64,000 bases of DNA, from NCBI RefSeq assembly GCF_006345805.1, contig NC_043018.1, positions 4,960,001 through 5,024,000 on the forward strand, written 5' to 3'. Shown one piece after another: positions 2,331-61,914 of the stretch. Origin of the DNA: Octopus sinensis. Its lineage: Eukaryota. Within the stretch, counting starts at the first letter, position 1; each line of letters starts with the position of its first letter. Below the pieces are notes generated by a model. It worked only from the letters and a program-made list of their open reading frames with translations, was not told where the DNA came from and searched no databases. The translations under genes were made by a program, and so were the position numbers.

Positions 2331-3910
2331 CATATGAGGGGAGAAATAAATATTCGTACATGTCAACATTCTTTATTTAATTTCTAATGAACATAAATGG
2401 ATATACCAATACTATATTTGCATACACATGCATAAACTAAGAATATGCAAAAGAAACTAATAAATTATAGTAACTATGGAATTTAAATACAATTATAAAT
2501 ATTTAGGGGTGAAAAAAGTATTCGTACAGAATAAATTTATGATTTTCTATGCCACAAAATACTGTTAAAATAATATTTTTGTTTACTAGAACTTTTTCAT
2601 TTGTTCCAATAATCTTATCAGTTGTCATTTTTAAGTGTCAAAACGCTAGCTTCTTCATTCAGCACTGAGACAACGTAAAGTAGTTTCGTAATAATGGCGA
2701 AAAGTAAAGAACTCACAAATACAGTGAAAAACTTAATTATTGAACTGTGGAAAGCAGGTAAAAGTTACGGGAAAATATCAGAGACCCTTTGTATTCCATT
2801 TTCTACCATATCTTCATTTATTCAAAGATATAAAAAATCGGGAACTGTTGAAAACAGAATAAGATCCGGTGCACCACGCAAGATTTCCCCTAGATCTTTA
2901 TGAAAAATGAATCTAAGAATCGAAAAAACCCCAAAAAAAAACCGCAATGATCACCAGAAAGGAGTTGCTAGAAAATTTGTTAGCTTCAGGGACTAGTGTT
3001 ACACTACGAACAATCAGCAATGAACTTCATAGGAATAAACTGAAGTCACACTCTCCTAGAAAGACTCCGCTGTTGACTAAAAGGCATAGAGATGCCCGTT
3101 TAAAATTTGTTTGTGAACATAAAGATAAATCTGATACATTCTGGGAAAATGTTCTATAGACAGACGAGTCGAAAATTGAATTGTTTGGACGAAATTCGCG
3201 TAGCCATGTTTGGAGGAAAGATGGTACCGCCTATTCGCCGAAAAACACAATTCCTACCGTAAAGTTTGGAGGTGGCAACATCATGGTGTGGGGGTCTTTC
3301 TCAGAATGCAGAAATATACCAAAATATTTTGAACAATAATTTATGAAACGCTGTAGAAAAGCTCCAGCTTTGTGAAGGGTGGGTTTACAACAGGATAACA
3401 ACCCTAAGCACGCGGCGAAATCTACCAAAAATGGATTGTCGATCACAATATAAAATTATTAGAATGGCCAAGCCAGTCACCTGACTTGAACCCCATTGAA
3501 AATTTGTGGCGTTATTTGAAAATTAAAATTCATTCAAGAGCCCCAACGTGCATTGCAGATTTGAAGAAAATTTGTCAAGAAGAATGGGAAAAAATTCCTA
3601 AAGAAACATGCGAGTCATTGATTAAGAACTACAAGAAGAGATTGGTTGAAGTGGAACTGAATAATGGTTATGCTAAGAAGTATTAAATCAGAATTATCAG
3701 TTAATTATGTTCTGTACGAATACTTTTTTCGCCCCTAAATATTTATAATTCTATATAAATTCCATAGTTACTATAATTTATTAGTTTCTTTTGCATATTC
3801 TTAGTTTATGCAAGTGTATACAAATATAGTATTGGTATATCCCATTTATGTTCATTAGAAATTAAATAAAGAATTTTGACATGTACGAATATTTATTTTT
3901 CCCCACTGTG
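2331..3910 (+). mobile_element. Tc1-family DNA transposon, complete, IR/DR type (about 200-bp TIRs, TA target duplication)
   Basis: 2331-2531 is the reverse complement of 3710-3910. Each TIR carries an outer and an inner direct repeat (aaa(t/a)aa(a/g)tattcgtaca). Flanked by TA at 2329-2330 and 3911-3912 within (TA)n. Confidence 0.92.
2694..3686 (+). pseudogene. Tc1 DD34E transposase, disrupted
   Basis: Contains an HTH start (MAKSKELT...RSGAPRK), VL*TDESKIELFG, KFGGGNIMVWG, QQDNNPKH and WPSQSPDLNPIENLW (D-34-E spacing). Disrupted by in-frame stops, frameshifts and a deletion after VWGSFS. Confidence 0.92.
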
Positions 3911-4288: not shown

Positions 4289-4874
4289 TATTATATGTAA
4301 TATATATATATATAATACATATATATATAATATACATATATATATGCATATGCATATATATATATATATGTATAATATATATACATATATATGCATATGC
4401 ACAGCAATAAAGATACGAAGAAAAGTATAAATATAAAGAAAGAATAAATGTGAATAACGGCAACAAAAAACTGACAAAACTGATCAGTTCCAACTGAGGA
4501 CGATTACCACGATTACCACCAACACCATTACTGACATCATCATCATCAACGTGACTACCATCAGTATCAATGATACCACTACCGCTGCCACCACCCACAC
4601 CACCATCGGTATTGTCTTCACCATTATCACCACTATCATCACCTTGATCAACAGGATCACCACTAAGGAAGGACTGACAGGCAACAATGAGTAAGGAAGG
4701 ACAGACGTTCAATGAGTATGGAAGGACATAAGACAATAATGAACAGCGAAGAACGGAAGAAGGAGAGACAACAATAAGTATGGAAAACATAAACCCAGTA
4801 ATTAATAAGGACATACAAGGAATATTCTTTTTGGTGAATCATTTTACATTTAAGAATTTGTTTCTGTCAAAACA

Positions 4875-5354: not shown

Positions 5355-5514
5355 TATCCAGTAATTTTTTACTAGTTTTATTTTGTCTTTGTGTCTTCTC
5401 TCCTTGTGCTATATGAACACTTAAGGTGGTCTTAGAGTCGGTTGCTGGCTGCTATTTTCAGCATGGCGGTATCTCGTAGATACCCTAAGTTATAATTATA
5501 TATATATATTCTTT

Positions 5515-5735
5515 TATTATTTTACTTGTTTCAGTCATTTGACTGCGGCCATGCTGGAGCACCGCCTTTAGTCGAGCAAATCGACCCCAGGATCATTCTT
5601 TGCAAGCCTAGTACTTATTTTATCGGTCTCTTTTGCCTAACCTCTAAGTTACGGGGACATAAACATACCACCATCGGTTATCAAGCGATGTAGGGGGGGA
5701 CAAACACAGACGCACAAACATATCACACATGCATA
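5515..5735 (-). mobile_element. Family B SINE, 3' half
   Basis: tttacttgtttcagtcatttgactgcggccatgctggagcaccgcc...ctaagttacggggac; reverse complement of 6060-6275. Confidence 0.85.
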
Positions 5736-5778: not shown

Positions 5779-6275
<497 letters not shown>

Positions 6276-9278: not shown

Positions 9279-9326
9279 GTCCTGTCTGTGTCTATATCTC
9301 TCTCCATCTATGTACGTGTGTGTGTG

Positions 9327-9424
<98 letters not shown>

Positions 9425-12310
9425 TATATATGTATGTATATGTATGTATATATATATATATATACATACATATATATACACATATATATTTACACGTGTA
9501 TATATGTGTATGTGTATAGTTATATGCGTATATGTATATATAAACATATTTATGCATATCTATGTATATGTATATGTATGTATGTATGCATGTATGCATG
9601 TATGTATGTATGTATGTATGTATGTATGTATGTATGTATGTATCTATCTATCTATCTATATATATATATATATGCACGCATGCATACACACAAACACGCA
9701 CACACACATCGGTTGCAGCTTTTTGCTTTCGATGTGTTTTGCTAAGTACACTACTTGAAAGACAGTGAACCTCTTTGATGTCGAACCGTTCACAGTTTCC
9801 AACGGCTCATGCATCAATGGCGGACAGCGACAGCAGAGTTCTATTAATTCAGTTGTGACGAAGATTCCAACAGAACAGAACCTAACACAATAAACAGCTT
9901 CACTCTAATGACAACAAAACCGAACGATCAGCCTGTGACCGCCCCAGCATTTAGTTTTGGAGCACCCGCCTACACGCACTAACACCAGTGCATTGCATCC
10001 GTATCTGCCTCCCACTACAGACCCAATGATCCTTCGGAAAATATGGACGACTCAACATCAAAGTGGTTAAAAGCTTACCAAGTCGTCTATTTAACAAAAT
10101 ATTCATACATGCAAACACACACACATACACACGTGCGAACACGCACTCATACGCACACACATATATTCCCGTGTCTGTGTGTATGCTTGTATATACATTT
10201 ATGCATATCTGCATATGTGTGTGTGTGTATGCGTGCTTGCGTGTGTGTGTGTGTAATTTACTTTTGGCCGCCCTGGTTAAAATTTCTAATAGTTTCAACG
10301 TGTTTATCATGTTTGTCATTGAACCTTTTTGTGACAATTGCGATTATGTGAGAAGCGATCCGCCGATTCGTACCGATCTCTTCACTCTCCCCACATTTAA
10401 TACACGATAGGTGGAGCCACTGCTTTAGCATCACCACCAGACTTTTGGGTTTCTTTAACAGAGTCCAGTCTGTTGCAATGCATCTGGTCAGATTTCTGGT
10501 CGAAGATAGCATCTTCCCTCCCTCTTGTCAGTCTCAGATAAGATTCTGGGTATCATGGGACCTACGCTTTCCACTCCGAATAATTATTATAAAAAAAACG
10601 ATAAGAATCTCTTCTCTTTGTCTATGTCTTTCGATTTTCTGTCCATTGATAATTTCTTCCCGTTTGCTTTCTTCGTAATTTCCTTACGAGTTTTATGTTC
10701 CTTAGACATTCCCAAGGAAAGAATATCAGAGCTCAATCACTTTTCTACGCTATTCAATCATTGCCACAAAACTCCATGAAACTACGTTTGGCAGCACGTT
10801 AGGAACCGCTCTTTACTCACAACAACATAGAGGTAAGAAATGGGTTAAATTCCTCCGATGCATATAGGTCAGGTGAACGCTTGTTTCGTTTCTTCTACAC
10901 ATCAGAACAAAACTCCCATTGACTTTACACTGCTTTCTTTATATGAGCTACTAAACCGCACTCGGCCCATTTCTTATATTTCAGTGTCTGTGGAGGAGAA
11001 AGCTTTTGTACACCACTCAACTTTCGTTTATGCGCCGGTAGATGACCAGTTAACAAGACCGTTTGCTTCCTGGAGGCTCTACCAACTGAAGACCAGAGCC
11101 GGTTTTAAGAGAGAGAGAGAGAGTGACCCGCGCATACGCACGAACAGAGAACGCTCTGATGAATTATTAGTATATCATTGTGGCTAATGGTGGAATTTCA
11201 AACTTTCAGCACTTTTTGGCTAGGACTGGCACACTACACAAAACATAAAGCATCAATTTTCAGCGTTTGTAGAGGGCTCCACTGACAATTCTCTAATTGA
11301 GCTCCGCACTTCCTAGCGCCAACCCTACCCAAAACTCCTTATATAAGGCTTCCCTCTCCTTTTGAATCGTGGTGTTCATTCCAGGTTTAGGTGACAGTAG
11401 CAGAATAGCTAAATTTATTGGTGGTTTTGTTGTTGTTGTTGTTGATAATTTCTTCTTTATTCTTGTTGTTGATGTTCCCGTTATTGTTTTTCTCCATATT
11501 GTTGTTGTTGAACAAGATGATTGTATTACAGTTTCCTCTGACTATACGCTTTTTTGTTGTTGGTCTTATCGGTGTTTACCGGTTTATATTGCATTATTTT
11601 TATTTTTATTTACCTGCTATTGTTTTCACTTTTATTACTATTGTTTGATGCACGCAGGAGGTCTTCACTATGTTTTAAAAACAGCGATTGTAGTAAACGT
11701 TACAGTGACGAGCTCTTTTGACCAAGCCACTGACTTGTATGATAGAGCTGATGTAGTTGATTAGTAGAATTATATTTGATTTTTGTCGAAAAAAATCCGA
11801 TTTAAACCTTTATAGAGACGACTCGTTAACTTCTTGCCACATGAACGGCTATCAGCTTGACAGGATTAGGAATGATTGAAGGAGTTTAGCATAAGAATAA
11901 CAATTATTTATAATATCAATGCAATTGTTTCATTTTTGTTAAAGATATTTCGTTAAACACAAATAAACATTATCATTTATAGCGAGTCAAACATAAAATC
12001 TGCTCTCCTTTTATACTTCCGTAACCCTGAAAAATTCAGTGAATTTTTAATATTAGCTCTCAAATTTCTAGCACGTCGTCACTTTATTGTAACAGTATTT
12101 TGCGAGACAGTTGTTCAACGAATATAATACATTCCACTTTGGAACACTTAAAAATTCCATAAAATCCACGGAAATGTAATATTATCTGGTTTAATCCTCC
12201 CTATATCCTAGGTGAGATGTTTCACTGTTTAATAGAGAATGGATAGATGTGATGTCGTCAAAACATTTTAATGTTTCATAGCAAAGTGAATTGTTAATTA
12301 GTTGCAGATA

Positions 12311-12400
12311 TTTGATTTGATTTTGATTTTTCCAGTTTCAGCTCATGAGCTGTGGCCATGCTGGGGCACCGCCATTTGCTGGAGCACCGCCATTAAGTAA
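12311..12400 (-). mobile_element. SINE/LINE-type 3' tail fused downstream of the 5S copy
   Basis: Minus strand reads ggcggtgctccagcaaatggcggtgccccagcatggccacagctcatgagctgaaactggaaaaatcaaaatcaaatcaaa. The ggcggtgc(t/c)ccagcatggcc tail is shared with SINE copies at 5515-5570, 6230-6275 and 55505-55560. Confidence 0.75.
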
Positions 12401-12405
12401 TTGGA

Positions 12406-12526
12406 ATGCTTACAGCACCTAGGTTTCCCAAGCGGTCACCCATCTAAGTGCTAACTAGGCTCGATGTTGCTTAACTTCGGTGAATCGGACGAGAACCGGT
12501 GCTTTCAACGTGATATGGCCGTAAGC
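12406..12526 (-). rRNA. Full-length 5S rRNA copy (dispersed; probably retroposed, no oligo-T terminator)
   Basis: Reverse complement reads gcttacggccatatcacgttgaaagcaccggttctcgtccgattcaccgaagttaagcaacatcgagcctagttagcacttagatgggtgaccgcttgggaaacctaggtgctgtaagcatt. This follows the metazoan 5S pattern, with box A (agttaagcaac), box C (gatgggtgaccgc) and terminal helix I (gcttac/gtaagc). Confidence 0.9.
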
Positions 12527-13919
12527 TTATTTTGGCCGTAATATTACTCATATTTTCTTAAGAATTCCTTGAAAGTTGCCTAGAGCTGTTCTGGTAGCAT
12601 CAAGAATTTGTCTTCTAGTACCAACAGCAAGAATTAAATGGCAACTTTCCGTCATTTAACCAATTCCAATGGAGTTAAATCAACATCAGCTCATGCCCAC
12701 TTGATGCTTAGAATTGTTATCATCAGCGTTGGCGCAATGAAATTGGTTAACCAAAGTGAATTAATGAATATTGGTTAAAAGCAACGTATGAATGTTGAGA
12801 GCAGGTACAACACACATTCTTTTTGGCACCTCGAGAAAAGAAACGCCGTCTCTCGTTCACAACACATCTAGAGGTTGAAAAGAAAAATGAAGATGTCACA
12901 ATCTTTAAGGTTCGGAAGTCAGTGGTAGAATTTTCCAAAATATATTCTGAAGGATATATTTCTGCTTGCGTATTTGTAAAAATTTTTCATATTCATGATT
13001 ACTTTCATTTGTTGGATTTTAGAAATAAGCTAATTTCAAATTGTGTCACTAAAACGAATTTATTTTACGAAATTCCATTCTGTTTATGGTTGGATGGGAA
13101 TTTGGCCGCTACTTCTAACTGCTTGAATAACCTGTCAGACGCTCCCTCGTTTGCTCGATGTTGATGCTGCTGCTAACAATTGTGAGGCGGAAGTGACATG
13201 AGACACAAGGCTGTATATATTTTTCATGGAAAAGGTAGATAGGGTTTACCTTTTGAAGGCGAACACTTAATCACTGACTGGTATAGAATCCATTTACCAT
13301 TCCCATGACTGAGAGTCAATTACATCACGTGACCAATTGCTGCTATTTGTATTAAATCATAGATGAAAGTCAACTCTAAATAAAATTCGTAGAAAAAATG
13401 TAAGATCTGTTAATGCTTTGTCGAAATTGTCTCCTTTTACCAGCTTAATAAGCTCTCTCATAACTAAGAATAAAAAGCATAAGAATTTCCGAGATTTGAT
13501 TTGAAGAGTGGTCGAGCAAGAGTCTTGTAGATCTGATTCGACCCAGTACTTTACTGGTACTTGTTTAATTAACACCCCACTTGATGGGGGTCAATGGAAA
13601 TGGAAGTAACAAGAAAATTTATTTTTTGTGCAGGATTCGATCATTTTGGGGTATTTTCCTATCCCCGCTGATATCGGCTTTTATTTCATCGGAGGGATCG
13701 ATAAAATAATATATCATTCAAATAGAATAATGGAAAATGATCAACTGCTTATTCTCCCTGCTGGCCGCGCGACCATCGTGAGTTCAAATTCCATCATGAT
13801 TTATTTTTCCCCCACCATGCAACCTAGACCGATGCAATAAGCATCAATAAAATATCAGTTATGTGGGACCTAACAAATATCCTGTAGAGACAAAAACTCT
13901 TCTACAAAACCCTTAATAA

Positions 13920-15476: not shown

Positions 15477-15703
15477 TTATTATATATTATTATTATTATT
15501 ATCATTATTATTATCATTATTATATTATTATTATTATTATTATCATTATTATTATTATTATTATTATCATTATTATTATTATTATTATTATCATTATTAT
15601 TATTATTATTATTATTATCATTATTATTATTATTATTATTATCATATTATATATTATTATTATTATTCATTATTATTTCATTATTATCATTATTATTATT
15701 ATT

Positions 15704-16198
15704 GAGTGAGAGAGCAGTTCATGCCATCAAAGTGACACTGGGGTAAATATACGAAGCCCAATATACCCATCATGACTACCCGTCTGATAAAGGTACACCA
15801 GGCACATGCATCACAACCATATGTGCGCGACATGGTGATCTCATATCAAGATAAACAGCACATGACCTTGCAGGTGGGGCCCAGTTAGAATTTTCTTCAG
15901 GTTGAGTAGCCCATCCCGCTCAAGCGGTCCCTGAATAAGGGTTGTTTAAGGATGTTGAAAGAACCACCCATGTTTCCAGAGGTGAACTATTCAAACCCAA
16001 AGAATCCCTATCAACACATGGCTATGATGCTCCCCCACTACTTCTGCTCGTGATCAGAGATGCACATATCTTCAGCCACTAAGGGACATGCTCAACTGGT
16101 TAAGGTCAAACAACTGACAAGCAAATCTGTGGTATTGAGCAGAATATTTGCTGTAGCCCATCTTTTATACCAAGACAAAACAATGTACATGATAACAC
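15704..16198. repeat. Unclassified dispersed repeat, copy 2, inside (TAA)n
   Basis: Non-coding block of about 495 bp bounded on both sides by (ATT)n; its first 170 bp are homologous to 14762-14940. Confidence 0.7.
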
Positions 16199-16455
16199 TT
16201 CATCATTATTATTATTATCTTATTATTATCATTATTATTATTATTATTATCATTATTATTATTTCATTATTATTATTATTATTATTATTTATTATCATAT
16301 TATTATCATTATTATTTATTATCATTATTTTATTATTATTATCATTATATTATTATTATTATTATTATTATCATTATTATTATTATTATTATCATTATTA
16401 TTATTATTATATTATTATTATTATCATTATTATTATATTATTATTATTATTATTA

Positions 16456-17031: not shown

Positions 17032-20000
17032 TTCAGTAGTTTTATTTTTATAACGTGCTTTCACTTCACTACCGAGCGCAGCTCTGTGTGCCTTGGGTAT
17101 GTGCTGTGATTTGTTGTGATGCTCTGATGGTTACTGTATTGAAAGTGTTCTTCGTAGGATGTGTGCAGTGCCTAGTAGTGCAATTTTCTATATGTTATAT
17201 GTGCTTGTGAGTCCTGGTGTTTTTGTTATGTATTTGTCTGAATATTGTTTATCATACCTAATGCACCTACTATGATAGGAATTGTTTCTGTTTTTAGATT
17301 CCACATTCTGGTTACCTCTATTTCCAGGTCTTTGTATTTTGAAAGTTTCTCTGTTTCTTTTAGAGAAACATTGTCATCTGCTGGTATTGATATATCAATT
17401 ACAACGCATTTATTTTCTTCATGATCTCTGACAACTATATCTGGTCTGTTGGCTTTAATTTCACTATCTGTGTGTATCGGTATATCCCAGAGTATGGTTG
17501 CTTTCTCGTTTTCTGTGACCTTTTCTGGTGTGTGCTTATACCATCTTTTTTCTGTTGTTATTCCATAATGTTGGGATAACTTCCAGTGTATGTAGGTCCC
17601 AACTCTGTCATGTCTGTGAATATATTCCTTCTTAGCTAGGACTGGGCAGCCAGAGATAATATGACTTATTGTTTCTTGTCCATCTCCACATATTCTGCAG
17701 TTACTTGTTATATTTCTTTTCATTACATGTTTTTGGTAATTTCTGGTGGGGAGGCTTTGGTCTTGTGCTGCAATTAAAAATCCCTCTGTCTCTGCTTTGA
17801 GTCCTGAGCTTCTCAACCATTGCTGGGATTTTTCCATGTCTCTTTGGCATTTAGCTTAGTCCAGTATTTGCCATGAAGGGGCTTTTCTTACAATCGCTTT
17901 ATCATGGTCCGTTGCTGTTCTAGTTTTAATTTTGATTTCATTTGCTTTATAGCTTTTGTTGTCTTCTTCTTCTTCTTCTTCTTTTTCTTCTTCTTCTTCT
18001 TCTTCTTCTTCTTCTTCTTCTTCTTCTTCTTCTTCTTCTTCTTCTTCTTCTTCTTCTTCTTCTTCTTCTTTTTTTCTTTTCTTGTTTTCCTATCTATTTT
18101 GTTTAGTTCATTTAGCGTCCAGTTAAGGATATTGTAGCTGTAACTTATAACTGGGACGGCTAAAGTGTTAATACCTATTATCTTGTTTTTAGCGTTGAGC
18201 TCTGTTTTTAGTATTGATCTAACTCGTCTATAGTATTTTTTCTTTATTTTCTCTTTCATTTGTGTGTTGTGTCTTATCTAGTTCATGGATTCCTAAGTAT
18301 TTGTAAGTTTGGCTTTGGTCTAATTCTCTTATTTCATTGGCTTTATCTAGTGTGATGTTGCTACTCTTAACTAGTTTTCCTCTGTTCAGGGTTACTTTGG
18401 CGCATTTTTCTAATCCAAATTTCATATCTATTTCTTTGGTAAATCCATGAACTGTCTTTAATAGTGTTTCCAGCTGTTTGTCATTTGCAGCGTATAGTTT
18501 TAGGTCATCCTTATATAAAAGGTTGCTGATAGTTTTGCCGTAACATTTATATCCGCATCTAGTTCTATTTAGCATATCAAATAGAGGTGGCAGTACCAAG
18601 CAGGAAAGGAGTGGAGAGAGCGTGTCTCCCTGGAATATTCCTCTTCTAATGTGGATCGCTTTGGTTTTCACAAGTCCCTCTTTTGTTTGGAGCTGTAGCA
18701 CTGTTTGCCATTTATTCATAGAGTGTCCTATACATTTTATAATTGTTGGTGTTACTTTGTTAATGACTAGTGTTTCGAGGATCCATGTGTGGGGATACTA
18801 TCAAACGCCTTTCTGTAGTCGATCCAGGCCATACTGAGGCCTTTCTTCTTTCTGTGGCTGTCTTCAGTTATGGCTTTATTGATCATTAGTTGATCTTTAC
18901 AGCCATATGAGCCTTTGCGGCATCCTTTCTGCTCTTCTGGAAACAGGTTGTTTCCGTCTAGGTGCTTGTTCAATCTTTGTGATATTACTGCAGTGAATGC
19001 TTTGTACATTGTAGGAAGACAGGTTATAGGTCTGTAGTTTTCTGGTTTTTCTGTCTCATTGGATTTGGGAATTAAGATGGTTTTTCCCCTTCGTGAGCCA
19101 TTCAGGCATTGTCTCTGGCTCTGCCAGTATGTTGTTAAAGTTTTCAGCCAGCTTTTTGTGCATTCCTGTCAGATATTTCAACCAGAAGTTGGGGATCTTA
19201 TCATGCCCAGGTGCTTTATGTTGCTTAGTCTTTGCAGTGCCTGGGTGACCACTTCAGTTGTTATGGGGGTCCAAAGTTGCTCAGATGCTAAGTTTGTTTT
19301 AATACTTCTTTATTTTGGTTGTTCATTCGCCGACCATATTTCTTTCCAGAATTCTTCCACTTCTTCTGCCGTTGGTGCTGCAGTGATTTCTATTTTATTT
19401 TTGCCAAGTTCTTAGAACTTTTTGGGGTTGGAGTTGAACTGTTTGTTTTGTTCAAAGGAACGTTGGCGTTTCTCATGCCGGCGGATCCTTTGTGCTTTGG
19501 CAAGAATATCTTGCTTTAGCTTTTCTTTTATCTCAGGTAAATCTTTTTCTGTGATGTTGTATTTGCACAGTATTTTTGTTTTCTTTTTGTTGCTTAGTAG
19601 CGTTGATTGTCTACTGATTTCATTAAGAATCGACAGATCTTTTCTCATTTTTTGTATTTTTTTAATGTTATTTATCCACAGGGTTTGTTTGGGTGGTGGT
19701 ACTCCTGTTTGGATGGGTTTGAGGGAGTATCCAGCTTCTTTTGTGGCTGCTGCATATACTAAGTCATTTAGCTCAGTGATATCGCTATTTGTTTCAGTGG
19801 CTATTAGTTCTGAGACGGCTAGGTTTATAATTGATGTTGTTTTTTTGTTTATTTTGATTTTTGGGAGGTATGGTCGGTGGTCTATTTTTAGATCTGTGTT
19901 TTTCAGTTCTTTGATTATTCTACTTTTTATAGTATCATAATCATTAGGCTCCCCTTCGTTGTTTTCAGTTTTAGATTTGTGTCGCTTTCTTTCTCATTCG

Positions 20001-40924: not shown

Positions 40925-41120
40925 AATGGCTGGATTTTGTGGGGATGGGGACAGTCGATCGCATCGACCTCAATACTCAACTGGTACTTAATGTATCAAC
41001 CCCGAAAGGATGAAAGTCAAGGCCGTCCTCGGCGGAATTTGAACTCAGAACGTAGCGATGGGTGAAATACCGCTAAGCATTTCGCCCGGCGCTCTAACCA
41101 TTCTGCTAGCTCGCCGCCTT
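40925..41120 (-). mobile_element. tRNA-derived SINE, family A
   Basis: gaaaggatgaaag...ggcggaatttgaactcagaacg...ctagctcgccgcc. Confidence 0.85.
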
Positions 41121-41515: not shown

Positions 41516-41746
41516 CTACTACTGAACCTATATATAATTTGCATAATATATAATTATGTGTAATATACATATATAATTATATGTATATATAACAATAAAT
41601 ACATTCATATATACATATGCATACATGCATATATATATATTACATATATAAATATACATACATGTATATATGGATGTGTATATATATATACATATGTGTG
41701 TGTGTATACATTATATTATATACATACAGACATGCATACAATATAT

Positions 41747-41783
<37 letters not shown>

Positions 41784-41833
41784 TATGTATGCTGTCTGTA
41801 TGTATATAATATATAGTATACAGACATGCATAC

Positions 41834-41877
<44 letters not shown>

Positions 41878-41970
41878 ATATGTTGCATGATTATATGTAT
41901 GCATGTGGTATGTATATAATATATATGTATACAGACATGATGCATACATACATACATACATACATATATA

Positions 41971-42002
<32 letters not shown>

Positions 42003-42009
42003 TATTATA

Positions 42010-42040
<31 letters not shown>

Positions 42041-42616
42041 CATACATACATGTATGCATGTATATATGTATGCATGTCTGTATGTTATAATATATATGTA
42101 TATATATACGCACACACACACTAAGTAACCTGTCGATACAAATCGATGTACCAAAGTATCCCGCTGATAATATCGGGCACCTACAGTACCCCCTTAACAG
42201 ACTAACAACTATAAAATAAACAACATATCACATGACTAGTAACCCAATTATCACATGCTAACATAACCAATTTATCACATAGCTTAATATCTCAAAGGAA
42301 TGTTTAAAATATGGGATAGACATGGCGTACGACATTCACAAAACAGGTTATCATAATGCAATCGTAAATAAAACATTTGAATCGATTTTTAGCCGCCGCC
42401 ATATTGATTCGGGATAATATAACAACATAACAGCATAAGAATATAGAGAGGGGGAGAGAGGGGGAGCTGGGAGGGCGAAGGAGAAACAAAGAAGGAAGGA
42501 GAGAGGGAGAATGAATTTGAGAGAGAGAGAAATCCTGCTTCGGTCATGTATTCTTCGCTCTTTTTCTCTCGATGTATATACATATACATACATATGCGCA
42601 CACATACACATTCTTC

Positions 42617-47278: not shown

Positions 47279-48459
47279 ATGGTTGCCTGCATCACAAGCA
47301 TTACTTGGTTTTAGGTTCGATTCGACTGAGCGATATTTTGAGCAGTATATTCCCCATGGTTTCAGGTTGGCAAATGATTTGTCAATGAAATTTGGTTGTC
47401 GATGACATACATACATACATACATGCATGCATGCATACATACATACATACATACATACATACATACATGCATACATACATGCATGCATGCATGCATACAT
47501 ACATACATACATACATACATTGTGAGTGTGTATATGTATGCATGTATGTATAGATATTTGTATAGGTGTTTGTGTGTGTGTGTGTGTATGTGCGTGTTTC
47601 ATATGAATATAGATTTCGACTTTGTATTTCGACAATAGACGTAAATGTAAAAGAGAAAAAAAGGAAGCAATTAAATTAAAAAAAAACAGTAAACCGGTGC
47701 TTAAGAACAAAAGTCCCTAGTGGTATCTCTTCCGCACGAGTTGCACGAGACGGTTCTATTGTTATCCTCACCATCGTAAATACACTAAACCAATGATAAG
47801 CCTCTTTATAAACATCTTATTAACGACGCTATTCTTCACAAAACGCCATATAAAATTTAATATATAAATGATAATAATAATAATAATAATAATATATCAT
47901 ATGTTCACGTATTTATATATATGTATGTATACATACATGTACCTATGTGTATGTGTGTGTTTGTGTATAAAATGTTATCAATAAATATTTGATGGAAATA
48001 TCATTAGATACGATATACCTCTTAAAAATCCATTTAACAACTAAAACATATTAATGACAATAATTCTGTAAAAATTTAAAATAAATAAATCAAAAAGTAG
48101 CAGCAATGGCAGAATTTGTTTTTTGGCTTTTGTTTATTTCCTTCCGATATTTTTCTATTTCTTTCCTTTTAAATTCAAAAAGTTGTACTCACGCACATTT
48201 AAAGCAACATATATTTACACTGACATACTTTCACATACACTCACTCACATAGACTAAAAAATAATACAATGCATGAAACGCAACAGAGGTTATAATGTTA
48301 AAATTATGTTTTACGTTCAATAAAATCAGTATAGAATCGGAAATCCATTTCCAAAGTACCATATATGCGTAGAGTGATACGGAAAGAGGAAATAATGAAA
48401 GGAGAGAAAGACAAAAGAAAAAAGATCAAAATAAGTAAATAAATTAAACGATGAAGAAC

Positions 48460-54444: not shown

Positions 54445-55209
54445 AATATATATATTATATATATATCTATGTATGTGTGTGGTGTGTGTGCGTGTGTGTA
54501 CAGAAACGCGCGGGCGCACGCAAACACACACACATATATACACATTGTTTGAAGTGGTGTACAAATTTCCTATATAAAGAAAAAGGAGGAAATCAGAATT
54601 GAATTTGGAATAATTATTTATTCAGCGCTTTCATTTCGTTTTAGGGATTCGTCTGGGATGATTATATATGAATAGAACCATTTTGCGCTCAAAATGGCGG
54701 TATTATTAAATGTCATAAGGGAAAAGTAAAAATCTTTCTTATTTATACTCGATGTATTCCCAACGGTATTGACACCAGTTTATTATTAGTGTTTTTATTG
54801 TCACTTGTCTAAGTCGACAACATATACACACAGGTAATATACGTAGCATTTCCGATGACGTGAATATCGAAGATTACGAAAGAATATCCGTGCGTGATCT
54901 GCTTCGTGATGGTCAGCGAAACACGTATAAAATGTAATAGATAAATCTTTTTATATATTACACACCCAAGACTTGATTTGTGTGTGTGTGTGTGTGTGTG
55001 TATATTGCACATTGATATTTCAAGAGGTATGTATTTACAAACATTTTTTCGTACATATGCTTCTGTAGTACACTCATACTCACACTCAGACATGGAACAA
55101 TCACGGAAAACCTCTTTCTTATATAAATATTGGAACGTATCTATCTATCTATCTATCTATCTATTCATATACAATTTTTCAAGAGTCGTTAAAGAAAACA
55201 TATACTCAC

Positions 55210-55353
55210 CCATATTTCCAAGCCCACCCGCGCTTCCATGGTAACCGTTCATGCCTGTAGTACTGTAGCTACTACTGCTGCTACTATGTGGAGTTGAGCC
55301 GTTCGAACCATAACCTCGTGGCGAAACGCTTGAACTTTGACCGCGGCCATAAC
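55210..55353 (-). CDS. coe: COE/EBF transcription factor, next coding exon (Ser/Thr/Pro-rich C-terminal region)
   Basis: Polypyrimidine acceptor tttccatttctctctcttacgtctag| and donor atgg|gtgagt; 144 nt, phase 1 to 1, in frame with the previous exon. Translates (G)YGRGQSSSVSPRGYGSNGSTPHSSSSSSYSTTGMNGYHGSAGGLGNM, matching the COE motifs SSSVSP(R/H)GY, STP and MNGY. Not in the ORF track (short). Confidence 0.9.
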
Positions 55354-55611
55354 CTAGACGTAAGAGAGAGAAATGGAAAATGGCGTCAGTTTCAATTTAT
55401 AACGTATCGCTTACATTTGGTGGCAGCCATGTTGTATTGCATAGGAAGGAAAAAAGACAAGAAAAAAAGAACGGGTTAATTCGTATCAAACATCTGTGAA
55501 AGTAGTTTATTCTTTTACTTGTTTCAGTCATTTGACTGCGGCCATGCTGGAGCACCACCTTTATATACAGGATAATTTCTTTACAAATGCTTGCTACATG
55601 ACAGGTGTTAG

Positions 55612-55925
55612 ATGCGTAGGCGCGTGGCTAAGTGGTAAGTGTATTTGGTTCACGACTGTAAAGTCTTGAGTTCGATTCTCGGTAGCACGTTGTGTCTTTT
55701 GAGCAAGATACTTTACTTCACATTGCTGCACTCCACTCAGCTGGCAAAAATGAGTTATACATGAAAATTGAAAAGAGCCAACCTTGTTACATTCTGTATT
55801 ACGCTGATCTTGCTGAGTACGCGTGTCTGTCGAGTGCTCAGCCACTTGCACGTTAATTTAAGGAGTAGGCTGTTCCGTTGATCGGATCAACTGGAACACT
55901 CGTCGTCGTAACCGACGGAGGGCCG
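55612..55925 (+). mobile_element. tRNA-derived SINE, family C (in COE intron)
   Basis: gcgtggctaagtggtaag...gagttcgattc...ttgagcaagatactttacttcac...gatcggatcaactggaacactcgtcgtcgtaaccgacgg. Confidence 0.8.
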
Positions 55926-61314: not shown

Positions 61315-61346
61315 ATTCAAAACGGTTGGATATAGAGCTAACCAAC

Positions 61347-61539
61347 CTTCTTCCCACTGACCATTGGCCGCGTCCTGGACACTAACAGCCAACTGGCTTG
61401 TGTAGGTATTGAAACTGGACATCGCTGACGTGTTGTTCATGGCAGGTGAACGGGGTGCTGGCAGAGACAACTGGTTAGGGTTGCGGGGCATGCTGTATAA
61501 GGCCTCAGCTAGATCTGCCGCTCGCTTCAAGATGATTTC
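61347..61539 (-). CDS. coe: COE/EBF transcription factor, internal coding exon (HLH helix 2 and start of the C-terminal region)
   Basis: Acceptor attttgcag| and donor aag|gttggt; 193 nt, phase 0 to 1. Translates [64 protein letters not shown], matching the EBF/Collier motifs EIILKRAAD(L/I)AEALYS and QLAVSV. Confidence 0.95.
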
Positions 61540-61914
61540 CTGCAAAATATTGAGAAGAATGAATGAGGAGTGAGAGACACGAGAGTGAGAGTGTGAGAGA
61601 GATTAAAAGAGATGAGTGGAAGTGGTAGTAAGAGAGACTGTAGAATGGGAGTGGATGAGAGAAATATTTTTTCATCATTTAGTTTAGGGCAGTGTCTAAG
61701 ACCTATCTGAAGAGCTCCGAGTCCAGAGAAAGGGATAGAGACAGTAAGAGTGAGAGCGAAAGAGAGAGGTGGAGGTGGTAGTACGGGTGATGAGTAGGAG
61801 GGTGAGAGACTCAGAGAAGGAAGGGTCTTCTAAGAGACCAGGCCCTTGTAACAAAGGAACAACTGCTAAAGATACTGAGGGATTAGTGATGGTGTTAGAC
61901 CGATTAAATGTCAG

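What the first reader, a model, noticed from the sequence alone, without database searches (positions are those of the whole stretch)
12311..12526. Full-length 5S rRNA fused to a SINE/LINE 3' tail: candidate 5S-derived SINE (SINE3-like) or chimeric retrocopy
Seen: a complete 5S gene of about 121 nt (minus strand) with box A and box C lacks the usual TTTT terminator. After about 10 nt it runs into the ggcggtgc..ccagcatggcc 3' tail used by the tRNA-SINEs in this window, ending in an (aaatc)n tail. The tail start is tandemly duplicated, and ttacggcca (5S nt 3-11) recurs just upstream at about 12533-12541. Known: 5S-headed SINEs (SINE3 of zebrafish, AmnSINE1) and snRNA-LINE template-switch chimeras exist. 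Inference: a Pol III type-1-promoter element mobilised by the same LINE as the family B SINEs. I do not know of one described in cephalopods, but cannot search.
Basis: partly seen in the sequence, partly recalled or inferred. Interest (0 to 1): 0.78.

Follow-up and report, generated by a model that had tools for sequence, protein, structure and literature searches.

The report
5S rRNA fused to LINE tail
An intact 5S ribosomal RNA copy in an intron of the Octopus sinensis COE1/EBF gene is joined to the short two-hairpin 3' end that octopus LINEs and their million-copy SINEs use for copying, so it has the build of a 5S-headed SINE, a known kind of mobile element, but I could not show whether it is one of a family or a single accident.

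Summary
Rfam finds a full-length 5S rRNA (100.2 bits, window 12526-12407, minus strand) with no T-run terminator. After it come a 12-nt linker, an 18-nt tandem duplication, a complete ~55-nt 3' module and an (AAATC)n-like end.

The module folds into two hairpins. It occurs 13 times in 113 kb of Octopus sinensis: in the abundant CORE-type SINE, in a tail-only copy, and at the end of a LINE ORF2 C-terminal fragment. The 5S-linked tail is a separate variant, closer to the LINE-type copies, with compensatory changes in hairpin 2.

So this is a LINE-mediated 5S-tail retrocopy with SINE3 architecture. Whether the junction is multi-copy was not testable. The DNA collections I could scan hold no cephalopod DNA, and I obtained only 138 kb of Octopus sequence, which contains no second copy.

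Published automated annotation already lists about 1,000 SINE/5S elements each in O. bimaculoides and O. vulgaris, and about 24,000 5S-derived loci in the giant squid. At that density 138 kb should hold only 0.06-0.08 further copies.

Verdict: probably a member of an uncharacterised low-copy octopus 5S-SINE family (about 0.5). A one-off template-switch chimera remains possible (about 0.3). It is a new member of a known kind, of moderate interest.

The parts
12407..12526 (-). Full-length 5S rRNA head (120 nt) carrying the internal type-1 Pol III promoter region
   Evidence: Rfam RF00001 100.2 bits, model 1-120/120, E = 1e-20. Canonical fold with a 9-bp helix I. CpG observed/expected 1.03.
12527..12543 (-). 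17-nt partial direct repeat of the 5S 5' end, immediately upstream (TATTACGGCCAAAATAA against GCTTACGGCCATATCAC; 11 of 16 identical, 9 contiguous). Origin unexplained.
   Evidence: Exact 9-mer TTACGGCCA at 12533-12541 and 12516-12524; sequence read.
12395..12406 (-). 12-nt linker TTCCAATTACTT between the 5S 3' end and the tail. No T4 run. Origin unknown.
   Evidence: Sequence. A fuzzy search of L003 and L004 finds no other copy of the linker joined to a tail.
12359..12394 (-). 18-nt tandem duplication AATGGCGGTGC(T/C)CCAGCA x2. It duplicates the 5' half of tail hairpin 1.
   Evidence: TRF period 18, 2.0 copies, 94% match, score 65.
12354..12373 (-). Tail hairpin 1, the near-invariant core GGCGGTGCCCCAGCATGGCC. 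This is the start of the complete 3' module.
   Evidence: Fold (((.((((....)))).))) in every variant. 92% of cells paired across 13 copies. The core is shared with 12 other copies in L003.
12339..12352 (-). Tail hairpin 2 (CAGCTCATGAGCTG), a sequence variant specific to this copy, followed by AAAC.
   Evidence: Folds as a 5-bp stem. Both inner pairs are swapped relative to the abundant SINE: U-A/C-G becomes C-G/U-A.
12309..12338 (-). AAAC, then an A-rich end with (AAATC)n-like microsatellite: the 3' terminus of the unit.
   Evidence: TRF period 5-6, 3.5-3.8 copies at 12310-12330; sequence.
12260..12263 (-). First TTTT downstream on the element's strand: the inferred Pol III stop for a read-through transcript.
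   Evidence: T-run scan.
5500..5700 (-). Context: a copy of the abundant SINE ('family B') whose tail has the same core.
6080..6275 (+). Context: a second family-B SINE copy with the same tail core.
55505..55640 (-). Context: a 5'-truncated, internally deleted family-B copy with the same tail core.

Best explanation
The locus is a retrocopy made by a LINE reverse transcriptase. A full-length 5S rRNA sequence is joined at its 3' end, through a 12-nt linker, to the complete two-hairpin 3' recognition module of an octopus LINE. The partner looks like a member of the CR1/L2/Jockey group. The same module ends the million-copy CORE-type SINE.

The result has the build of a minimal SINE3: head plus tail, with no central body. 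The 5S internal promoter (box A, IE, box C) can recruit TFIIIA, TFIIIC and Pol III. With no T4 run inside the unit, transcription would continue through the tail to the TTTT 48 nt beyond it. The tail hairpins and terminal repeat would then let the partner LINE's reverse transcriptase copy the RNA into new sites.

I think it most likely belongs to the uncharacterised, low-copy (about 1,000 copies) 'SINE/5S' repeats that automated annotation has already listed in Octopus genomes.

Shown: the anatomy, the shared module, its two-hairpin fold with compensatory changes, and the LINE-like 3' end carrying it.
Inferred: Pol III read-through, mobilisation in trans, family membership, and the LINE clade.
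For: - Intact full-length 5S with a canonical fold.
- No T4 in the 216-nt unit; the first is at 12263-12260.
- The tail begins exactly at the base of hairpin 1. A tail-only copy starts at the same place and shares 28 identical nt, including the AAT prefix and the GGCCACAG variant (L003 108278-108251).
- All tail variants fold into the same two hairpins. 86.5% of cells are paired against 42% or less for slid controls, and two hairpin-2 pairs change on both sides.
- The same module ends a frameshifted ORF2 C-terminal fragment plus about 110 nt of UTR at L003 ~110100-110900.
- There are 13 tail cores in 113 kb, so the machinery has been highly active.
- The chance that an unrelated tail starts within 20 nt on the same strand is about 1e-3.
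- PMC8967140 Table S2 lists SINE/5S at 0.030% (1,095 elements) in O. bimaculoides and 0.039% (about 996) in O. vulgaris, the species I take from my own knowledge (not tested here) to be closest to the host.
- Precedents for a 5S head on a tail shared with a tRNA-SINE: HaSE3/HaSE1 and CoeSINE5/CoeSINE4.
Against: - No second copy of the 5S-tail junction was seen. There is one 5S in 138 kb of O. sinensis plus O. vulgaris sequence, and none in a permissive Rfam scan of the window.
- No convincing TSD; the best candidates are 5-6 nt of AAATA/AAATAT in AT-rich sequence.
- The head looks undiverged from a functional 5S rRNA, which also fits a recent single event.
- The linker, the 18-nt duplication and the 17-nt 5' partial repeat look like one-off irregularities rather than a polished consensus.
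- 'SINE/5S' labels from RepeatModeler could come from many independent chimeras or from 5S rDNA, and I could not compare this copy with those consensus sequences.
- Pfam does not recognise the LINE fragment.
Confidence: 0.5

Rival explanations
1. A one-off chimeric retrocopy. While copying the 3' module of a LINE or SINE RNA at a target nick, the LINE reverse transcriptase switched template to a mature 5S rRNA and copied it to its 5' end. This is how the U6-L1 and 5S-L1 chimeras of mammals arise. The product was never transcribed and re-copied. It is a dead-on-arrival proto-SINE.
For: - The 5S is full length, starts at +1, and looks undiverged.
- Only the terminal module of the LINE/SINE is present, starting at a structural boundary where a tail-only truncated copy also starts.
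- The junction is irregular: the 12-nt linker, the 18-nt duplication and the 5' partial repeat of 5S nt 3-11 fit repeated template jumps or slippage.
- With about a million retrocopies made by this machinery, occasional switches to abundant small RNAs are expected.
- No second copy in 138 kb.
Against: - Published annotation reports about 1,000 SINE/5S elements per Octopus genome, more than sporadic chimeras usually give, although many independent chimeras could produce such a count.
- The unit has every property needed for autonomous Pol III transcription through the tail.
- The junction is not directly at the 5S 3' end.
- The two units of the 18-nt duplication both carry the AAT prefix, which is explained more simply by later slippage than by two different templates.
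Confidence: 0.3
2. Two independent events. An orphan 5S gene or 5S retro-pseudogene happened to receive, 12-15 nt downstream and in the same orientation, a separate insertion of a heavily 5'-truncated LINE/SINE tail.
For: Tail-only copies do exist, for example L003 108278-108200, which is conserved in O. vulgaris. The tail core is frequent, at 13 per 113 kb. No TSD brackets the whole unit.
Against: - The chance of a same-strand tail starting within 20 nt of a given point is about 1e-3, and lower for tail-only copies.
- A real 5S gene would keep its T-run terminator between the gene and the insert, and there is none.
- An isolated 5S in a 55-kb intron still needs its own retro-origin, and this LINE type needs the tail for that.
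Confidence: 0.07
3. A functional dispersed 5S rRNA gene variant. Its transcript reads through to a distal terminator and is trimmed back to a mature 5S rRNA. The tail is incidental.
For: The sequence and fold are those of an intact 5S rRNA and the promoter region is conserved.
Against: There is no adjacent terminator and no tandem array; it is the single 5S in 138 kb. The immediate fusion to a mobile-element tail is unexplained by this reading. Nothing here tests expression.
Confidence: 0.03

Closest known systems
SINE3 of zebrafish (Kapitonov & Jurka 2003) and other 5S rRNA-derived SINEs: SINE3-1_TC in Tribolium, SINE-1_Pmo in python, and the fruit-bat and springhare families
   Same: A 5S rRNA-derived head with the type-1 Pol III promoter, no terminator after the head, and a 3' end taken from a LINE and ending in short repeats. 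From my own recollection, not checked here, the zebrafish family also uses a CR1-like tail.
   Different: There is no central body: the head is joined to the roughly 55-nt tail module by 12 nt. The head appears undiverged from a working 5S rRNA. The host is a cephalopod mollusc. Family status is not shown.
HaSE3 / HaSE1 (Helicoverpa) and CoeSINE5 / CoeSINE4 (coelacanth)
   Same: A 5S-headed element shares its 3' part with a tRNA-headed SINE of the same genome, explained as a chimera of 5S rRNA with an existing SINE or LINE tail (PMC3272025, PMC5786205).
   Different: Those pairs share body plus tail and use RTE-derived sequence. Here only the terminal two-hairpin module is shared, it is a different sequence variant from the abundant SINE's, and the partner looks CR1/L2-like.
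Template-switch chimeric retrogenes (U6-L1, 5S-L1; Buzdin et al. 2003, cited in PMC4824008 and PMC4758252)
   Same: A full-length small Pol III RNA in sense orientation fused upstream of a 5'-truncated LINE/SINE 3' part. The mechanism is a reverse-transcriptase template switch during target-primed reverse transcription.
   Different: The mammalian chimeras use poly(A)-dependent L1 and have clear TSDs. Here the LINE is of the type with a structured tail, the tail module is complete, and the product could itself be a Pol III-driven SINE.
'SINE/5S', 'SINE/5S-Core-RTE' and 'SINE/5S-Deu-L2' classes in automated cephalopod repeat annotation (PMC8967140 Table S2), and the ~24,000 5S-derived loci of Architeuthis dux (PMC6962438)
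   Same: 5S-derived interspersed repeats in cephalopod genomes, including the two Octopus species I take to be closest to the host.
   Different: Only class labels and counts are published. The Deu-L2 and Core-RTE classes imply a central domain, which this element has no room for. I could not compare sequences.
AmnSINE1 / Deu-SINEs with a 5S head
   Same: 5S promoter head on a LINE-mobilised SINE.
   Different: AmnSINE1 has a composite 5S plus partial tRNA head and a Deu central domain. Neither is present here.

Membership tests
SINE3 (5S rRNA-derived SINE) | 5' head derived from 5S rRNA and keeping the internal type-1 Pol III promoter region (box A, IE, box C) | tested here: met
   Rfam RF00001 100.2 bits, model 1-120/120, high posterior probability throughout; canonical fold.
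SINE3 (5S rRNA-derived SINE) | No Pol III terminator between head and tail, so one transcript covers the whole unit | tested here: met
   No TTTT in 12526-12311; the first is at 12263-12260. 31% of mononucleotide shuffles of the unit do contain a TTTT, so the absence is only weak evidence on its own.
SINE3 (5S rRNA-derived SINE) | 3' end shared with a LINE of the same genome (the tail recognised by the partner's reverse transcriptase) | tested here: met
   The same core and two-hairpin module ends a frameshifted ORF2 C-terminal fragment at L003 ~110100-110900. There is no Pfam model for the region. The clade of the LINE remains inferred.
SINE3 (5S rRNA-derived SINE) | Dispersed multi-copy family with the same head-tail junction | tested here: inconclusive
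   One copy in 138 kb. At published densities 0.06-0.08 further copies are expected. Viral, metagenome and prokaryote-genome collections contain no copy even of the generic tail. No junction-spanning ORF is on record.
SINE3 (5S rRNA-derived SINE) | Target-site duplications flanking the whole unit | tested here: inconclusive
   Only 5-6 nt matches (AAATA/AAATAT, CAAAAT) in AT-rich flanks. From my own knowledge, LINEs of the CR1 type often leave short or no TSDs.
SINE3 (5S rRNA-derived SINE) | Pol III transcription and LINE-dependent retrotransposition | not testable with these tools
   Needs small-RNA or Pol III ChIP data, or a retrotransposition assay.
Template-switch chimeric retrogene (U6/5S-LINE type) | Full-length small RNA, sense orientation, fused 5' of a 5'-truncated LINE/SINE 3' part | tested here: met
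Template-switch chimeric retrogene (U6/5S-LINE type) | Junction at the exact 3' end of the mature small RNA | tested here: inconclusive
   12 nt of unknown origin lie between the 5S end and the tail unit. The true 3' end of octopus 5S rRNA was not available; PMC326244 is not held.
Template-switch chimeric retrogene (U6/5S-LINE type) | Junction unique to the locus | not testable with these tools
   Needs a whole-genome search of Octopus assemblies.
Bona fide 5S rRNA gene | T-run terminator directly after the coding region, and tandem-array organisation | tested here: not met
   No T4 for 144 nt after the 3' end. It is the single 5S in 138 kb.
5S-Deu-L2 / AmnSINE1-type or 5S-Core-RTE-type SINE | Central conserved domain (Deu or CORE) between head and tail | tested here: not met
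   Only 12 nt separate the head from the tail module, which leaves no room for a 60-80 nt domain.

The most novel reading that the evidence does not exclude
This may be a young, possibly still active, Octopus-lineage SINE3 family or its founder copy. It would be the first 5S-headed SINE characterised in a mollusc, with the minimal possible build: an unaltered 5S rRNA plus a ~55-nt two-hairpin LINE module. It would be mobilised by the same CR1/L2-like LINE that drove the million-copy SINE expansion of octopus genomes. That would be a SINE caught at or just after its birth.
Probability: 0.35. Interest if true: 0.55.

Novelty: new member of a known kind. Interest (0 to 1): 0.4.

Why it matters
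If the junction proves to be multi-copy, this is a clean example of how a SINE is born. An abundant Pol III RNA acquires, in one step, the minimal structured 3' module that a 'stringent' LINE needs. It would do so in the genome lineage best known for a huge SINE expansion.

It would also put a sequence, a junction and a partner LINE behind the anonymous 'SINE/5S' rows in cephalopod repeat tables. The module defined here (invariant hairpin 1, co-varying hairpin 2, AAAC, terminal repeat) is a testable candidate for the recognition element behind octopus SINE amplification.

If the junction is unique, the locus is an ordinary chimeric retrocopy, interesting only as an illustration.

Tried and rejected
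1. DNA pattern scans for other copies. I scanned viral contigs with the generic tail core, metagenome contigs with the 5S-specific tail variant and then the generic core as a positive control, and genome contigs. All returned zero. Even the million-copy tail is absent, so these collections hold no cephalopod DNA and say nothing about copy number.

2. Spurious-ORF route. A composite six-frame protein query across the junction gave 559 word candidates, none with E <= 10. The longest junction-spanning ORFs are only 30-31 aa, so gene callers would rarely call them. Uninformative.

3. Exact look-ups of window ORFs near the element: not on record.

4. Genome sampling through the window's RT fragment. 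The nearest relatives (88% and 81%) sit on ~1-kb contigs, so this was useless for sampling.

5. Orthologous-site (empty-site) test through the host gene COE1.
- O. bimaculoides (340 kb), O. vulgaris middle model (165 kb) and Argonauta (398 kb) gene ranges are too long for DNA retrieval.
- The O. sinensis model returned the window's own chromosome.
- The O. vulgaris C-terminal model stops about 15 kb short of the site.
- The cuttlefish model and O. bimaculoides isoform X3 are not on record.

6. Flanking ORFs added to the COE query gave no hits among the 120 listed of 279.

7. A permissive Rfam scan of the window for degraded 5S heads showed only microsatellite-driven miRNA false positives among the 150 listed of 329 matches.

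8. CpG retention as an age clock. Window-wide CpG observed/expected is already 0.83, so it cannot discriminate.

9. The published octopus 5S rRNA sequence (PMC326244) and the octopus genome paper (PMC4795812) are not held.

10. I considered and rejected nested insertion into an older 5S-SINE as the source of the upstream TTACGGCCA. The downstream flank shares only ATATC with 5S nt 11-15 and then diverges.

11. I did not run the search of protein representatives. A 30-aa query cannot reach significance without also sharing the 5-mers that one search had already screened.

Full report
**Where the window comes from**

The window is 100% identical over all 64,000 nt to L003 22040-86039, reversed. 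L003 is Octopus sinensis chromosome CM016880.1 (GCA_006345805.1), positions 4,932,623-5,046,039. By my arithmetic the window is CM016880.1:4,960,001-5,024,000.

Two exons of the COE1/EBF transcription-factor gene lie on the minus strand at 61342-61548 and 55208-55354. The next exon lies beyond the window, at L003 98669. The element at 12.4 kb therefore sits in a large intron, about 68 kb in O. sinensis (L003 30832-98669), in the same orientation as the host gene.

**Checking the observation**

- **5S head.** Rfam's 5S rRNA model matches 12526-12407 (minus) end to end: model 1-120 of 120, 100.2 bits against a gathering score of 38, E = 1e-20. The sequence folds into the expected three-way structure with a perfect 9-bp helix I.
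- **No terminator.** The 3' end is followed by TTCCAATTACTT, not a T-run. No TTTT occurs anywhere in the 216-nt unit. The first is at 12263-12260, 48 nt past the end.
- **Tail start.** After the 12-nt linker comes an 18-nt unit, AATGGCGGTGC(T/C)CCAGCA, present twice in tandem (TRF period 18, 94% match, 12359-12394).
- **Rest of the tail.** The second unit runs on into GGCCACAGCTCATGAGCTGAAACTGG and an (AAATC)n-like end (TRF, 12310-12330).
- **Upstream repeat.** TTACGGCCA (5S nt 3-11) recurs at 12533-12541. Read in register, 17 nt upstream of the gene resemble its first 17 nt (11 of 16 identical). I have no tested explanation for this.

**What the tail is**

The core GGYGGTGCYCCAGCATGGCC occurs at three other places in the window and 13 times in the 113-kb L003.

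- **Abundant SINE.** Most copies belong to one abundant SINE with a CORE-like segment (…ggcaccttgggcaagtg…), an internal (TA/TG)n microsatellite, a body, and the tail …GGCGGTGCTCCAGCATGGCCGCAGTCAAATGACTGAAACAAGTAAAAGAATAA. This fits the 'SINE/tRNA-Core' class, which makes up 27-31% of annotated repeats in Octopus, about 1.1 million elements in O. bimaculoides. I could not confirm a tRNA head with ARAGORN or Rfam. ARAGORN found no tRNA in the window, Rfam found none at gathering scores in 138 kb, and a permissive Rfam run on a different SINE-like head also found none.
- **Tail-only copy.** L003 108278-108200 (-) starts at AATGGCGGTGC with unrelated AT-rich DNA upstream. It shares 28 identical nt with the 5S-linked tail, including the AAT prefix and the GGCCACAG variant. 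O. vulgaris has its ortholog.
- **LINE fragment.** At L003 ~110100-110900 (+), a frameshifted reading frame (…LWSAYSAGLIAELEAVQRCYTRKIASMEQLRY·ERLKELRLCSP·RRREMY…FKKQFDLLLSKIPNE) is followed by about 110 nt and then GGCGGTGCCCCAACGTGGCCACATCCTCACGGCTGAAACATTTAAAAGAATAAAAGAATA. Pfam has no model for this region. I read this as the 3' end of a LINE of the CR1/L2/Jockey group. The clade is an inference.

**The module is structured**

Each tail variant folds the same way. Hairpin 1 is made by the near-invariant core. Hairpin 2 is variable in sequence. Then come AAAC and an A-rich repeat (z-scores -2.2 to -3.9 for four SINE-type, tail-only and 5S-linked variants, but not for the decayed LINE fragment).

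On the 13-copy alignment, 86.5% of cells pair, against 15-42% when partners are slid. Two hairpin-2 pairs change on both sides, and the covariation score is reached by only 7 of 500 shuffles. This support is modest because the sample is small and the copies are related.

In the 5S-linked tail both inner pairs of hairpin 2 are swapped relative to the abundant SINE (U-A/C-G becomes C-G/U-A). It also shares A21 and the C25-G32 pair with the LINE fragment. So it is not a mutated family-B tail. It is a separate, structurally intact variant closer to the LINE-type copies.

The module's 5' boundary, the base of hairpin 1, is where both the 5S-linked tail and the tail-only copy begin.

**How it most likely arose and works**

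The anatomy fits target-primed reverse transcription by the partner LINE. Synthesis starts on the terminal repeat and the two-hairpin module. At the module's 5' boundary the enzyme switches to a 5S rRNA and copies it to its first nucleotide.

That event gives a unit with an internal Pol III promoter, no internal terminator and a complete LINE recognition module, which is a minimal SINE3. If such a unit is transcribed to the downstream TTTT, it can be copied again.

An independent insertion of a tail beside an orphan 5S is unlikely. The chance of a same-strand tail start within 20 nt is about 1e-3, and a real gene's terminator would have been kept.

The 18-nt duplication is most simply later slippage plus one transition, because both units carry the AAT prefix.

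**Family or single event?**

- The DNA collections open to pattern scans contain not one copy even of the generic tail, so they hold no cephalopod DNA.
- A six-frame protein query over the junction found nothing, but the junction ORFs are only 30-31 aa.
- The host-gene route yielded the window's own chromosome plus 49 kb and 25 kb of O. vulgaris that stops 15 kb short of the orthologous site. The other gene models were too long or not on record.
- In these 138 kb there is exactly one 5S.

The literature changes the prior.

- PMC8967140 (Table S2) lists SINE/5S at 0.030% of annotated elements in O. bimaculoides and 0.039% in O. vulgaris. Using the totals in its Table S3, these are 1,095 and about 996 elements.
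- The same table lists 778 'SINE/5S-Core-RTE' elements in O. bimaculoides. In Architeuthis dux it lists SINE/5S at 0.185% and SINE/5S-Deu-L2 at 1.18%.
- The giant-squid genome paper reports about 24,000 loci derived from 5S rRNA, 'many likely SINEs' (PMC6962438).

At about 0.5 elements per Mb, my sample should contain 0.06-0.08 further copies, so finding none means nothing.

These counts make a multi-copy 5S-headed repeat in Octopus likely. But a machinery that has made about a million retrocopies could also have produced many independent 5S chimeras, and I could not compare sequences.

I put family membership at about 0.5, a one-off chimera at about 0.3, independent adjacent events at about 0.07 and a working orphan gene at about 0.03. 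The remainder is unassigned.

**Comparison with what is known**

The closest kind is SINE3, the 5S rRNA-derived SINEs known from fishes, amniotes, fruit bats, springhare, Tribolium and Lepidoptera.

The closest situations are HaSE3/HaSE1 and CoeSINE5/CoeSINE4, where a 5S-headed SINE shares its 3' part with a tRNA-headed SINE of the same genome.

The membership tests came out as follows:
- 5S head: met.
- Absence of a terminator: met.
- LINE-shared tail: met.
- Multi-copy junction: inconclusive.
- TSDs: inconclusive.
- Activity: not testable with these tools.
- Deu or CORE central domain: not met, since only 12 nt separate head and tail. The element therefore does not fit the 5S-Deu-L2 or 5S-Core-RTE classes.

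No paper in the held library describes an octopus 5S-headed SINE, its junction, its tail or its partner LINE.

**Verdict**

This is a real and cleanly built 5S-LINE-tail retrocopy with SINE3 architecture. It is a new member of a known kind. Interest is moderate (0.4). It would rise if a genome-wide search shows a shared junction and young copies, and fall to ordinary if the junction is unique.

Noticed in passing
window 12527-12543 (-): A 17-nt partial direct repeat of the 5S 5' end lies directly upstream of the gene: TATTACGGCCAAAATAA against GCTTACGGCCATATCAC, with 9 contiguous identical nt. It is neither a TSD nor a nested older copy. It may be a second template jump or an old slippage event. 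Unexplained.
   Followed up: partly
L003 110100-110900 (+), about 37 kb from the element, outside the window (CM016880.1 ~4,935,140-4,935,940): A 5'-truncated, frameshifted LINE 3' end: an ORF2 C-terminal region resembling the CR1/L2/Jockey group, then about 110 nt of UTR ending in the same two-hairpin module and (AAAAGAAT)n. It is a candidate partner LINE of the abundant octopus SINE. O. vulgaris has the ortholog (L004 ~22930).
   Followed up: partly
L003 108200-108278 (-), outside the window; ortholog at about base 4401 of the reverse complement of L004 (about L004 20375 on the + strand): A tail-only retrocopy consisting of just the ~55-nt module and an A-rich repeat. It starts at the same nucleotide as the 5S-linked tail. 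This suggests the base of hairpin 1 is a preferred stop or switch point for the reverse transcriptase.
   Followed up: partly
window 17226-18719 (-): A frameshifted LINE fragment with RVT_1 and zf-RVT domains, interrupted by an (AAG)n run read as poly-lysine. Its nearest relatives are 88% (Logan SRR7158634) and 81% (GCA_024449705.1) identical, with about 60% relatives in corals, sea cucumbers and shrimps. Its 3' end lacks the tail core, so it is not the partner of these SINEs.
   Followed up: partly
window 55208-55354 and 61342-61548 (-): Two exons of COE1/EBF (the end of the HLH domain and the start of the C-terminal region), matching the O. bimaculoides, O. vulgaris and O. sinensis protein models almost exactly. 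One model reads through the 55.2-kb exon's splice site to an alternative short C-terminus (…GTWPMYGF).
   Followed up: yes
window 2399-2539 and 3702-3842: An inverted repeat pair of 141 nt, 94% complementary, 1,162 nt apart, flanked by microsatellites that are also in inverted orientation. It could be two opposed repeat copies or the ends of a DNA transposon.
   Followed up: partly
window-wide, e.g. 1500-1900, 9300-9700, 41600-42100, 47400-47600: Long (TA)n/(TG)n microsatellites, many inside or beside the abundant SINE. They give more than 300 sub-threshold Rfam matches to mir-297, mir-466 and mir-3149 in permissive mode. These are artefacts of the repeat composition.
   Followed up: yes
window 15680-16436 and L003 105335-106090: A dispersed repeat about 90% identical over 760 nt, made of low-complexity trinucleotide runs that read as long I/L/Y/N/H homopolymer ORFs.
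   Followed up: no
L003 44923-45100 (+) (window ~40940-41117, -): A different SINE-like head (ggcggcgagctagcagaatggttagagcgccgggcg…gagttcaaattccgccgagg) with A-box-like and B-box-like motifs by eye but no Rfam tRNA match at E <= 1. It has no tail core and runs into a long (TA)n tract.
   Followed up: partly
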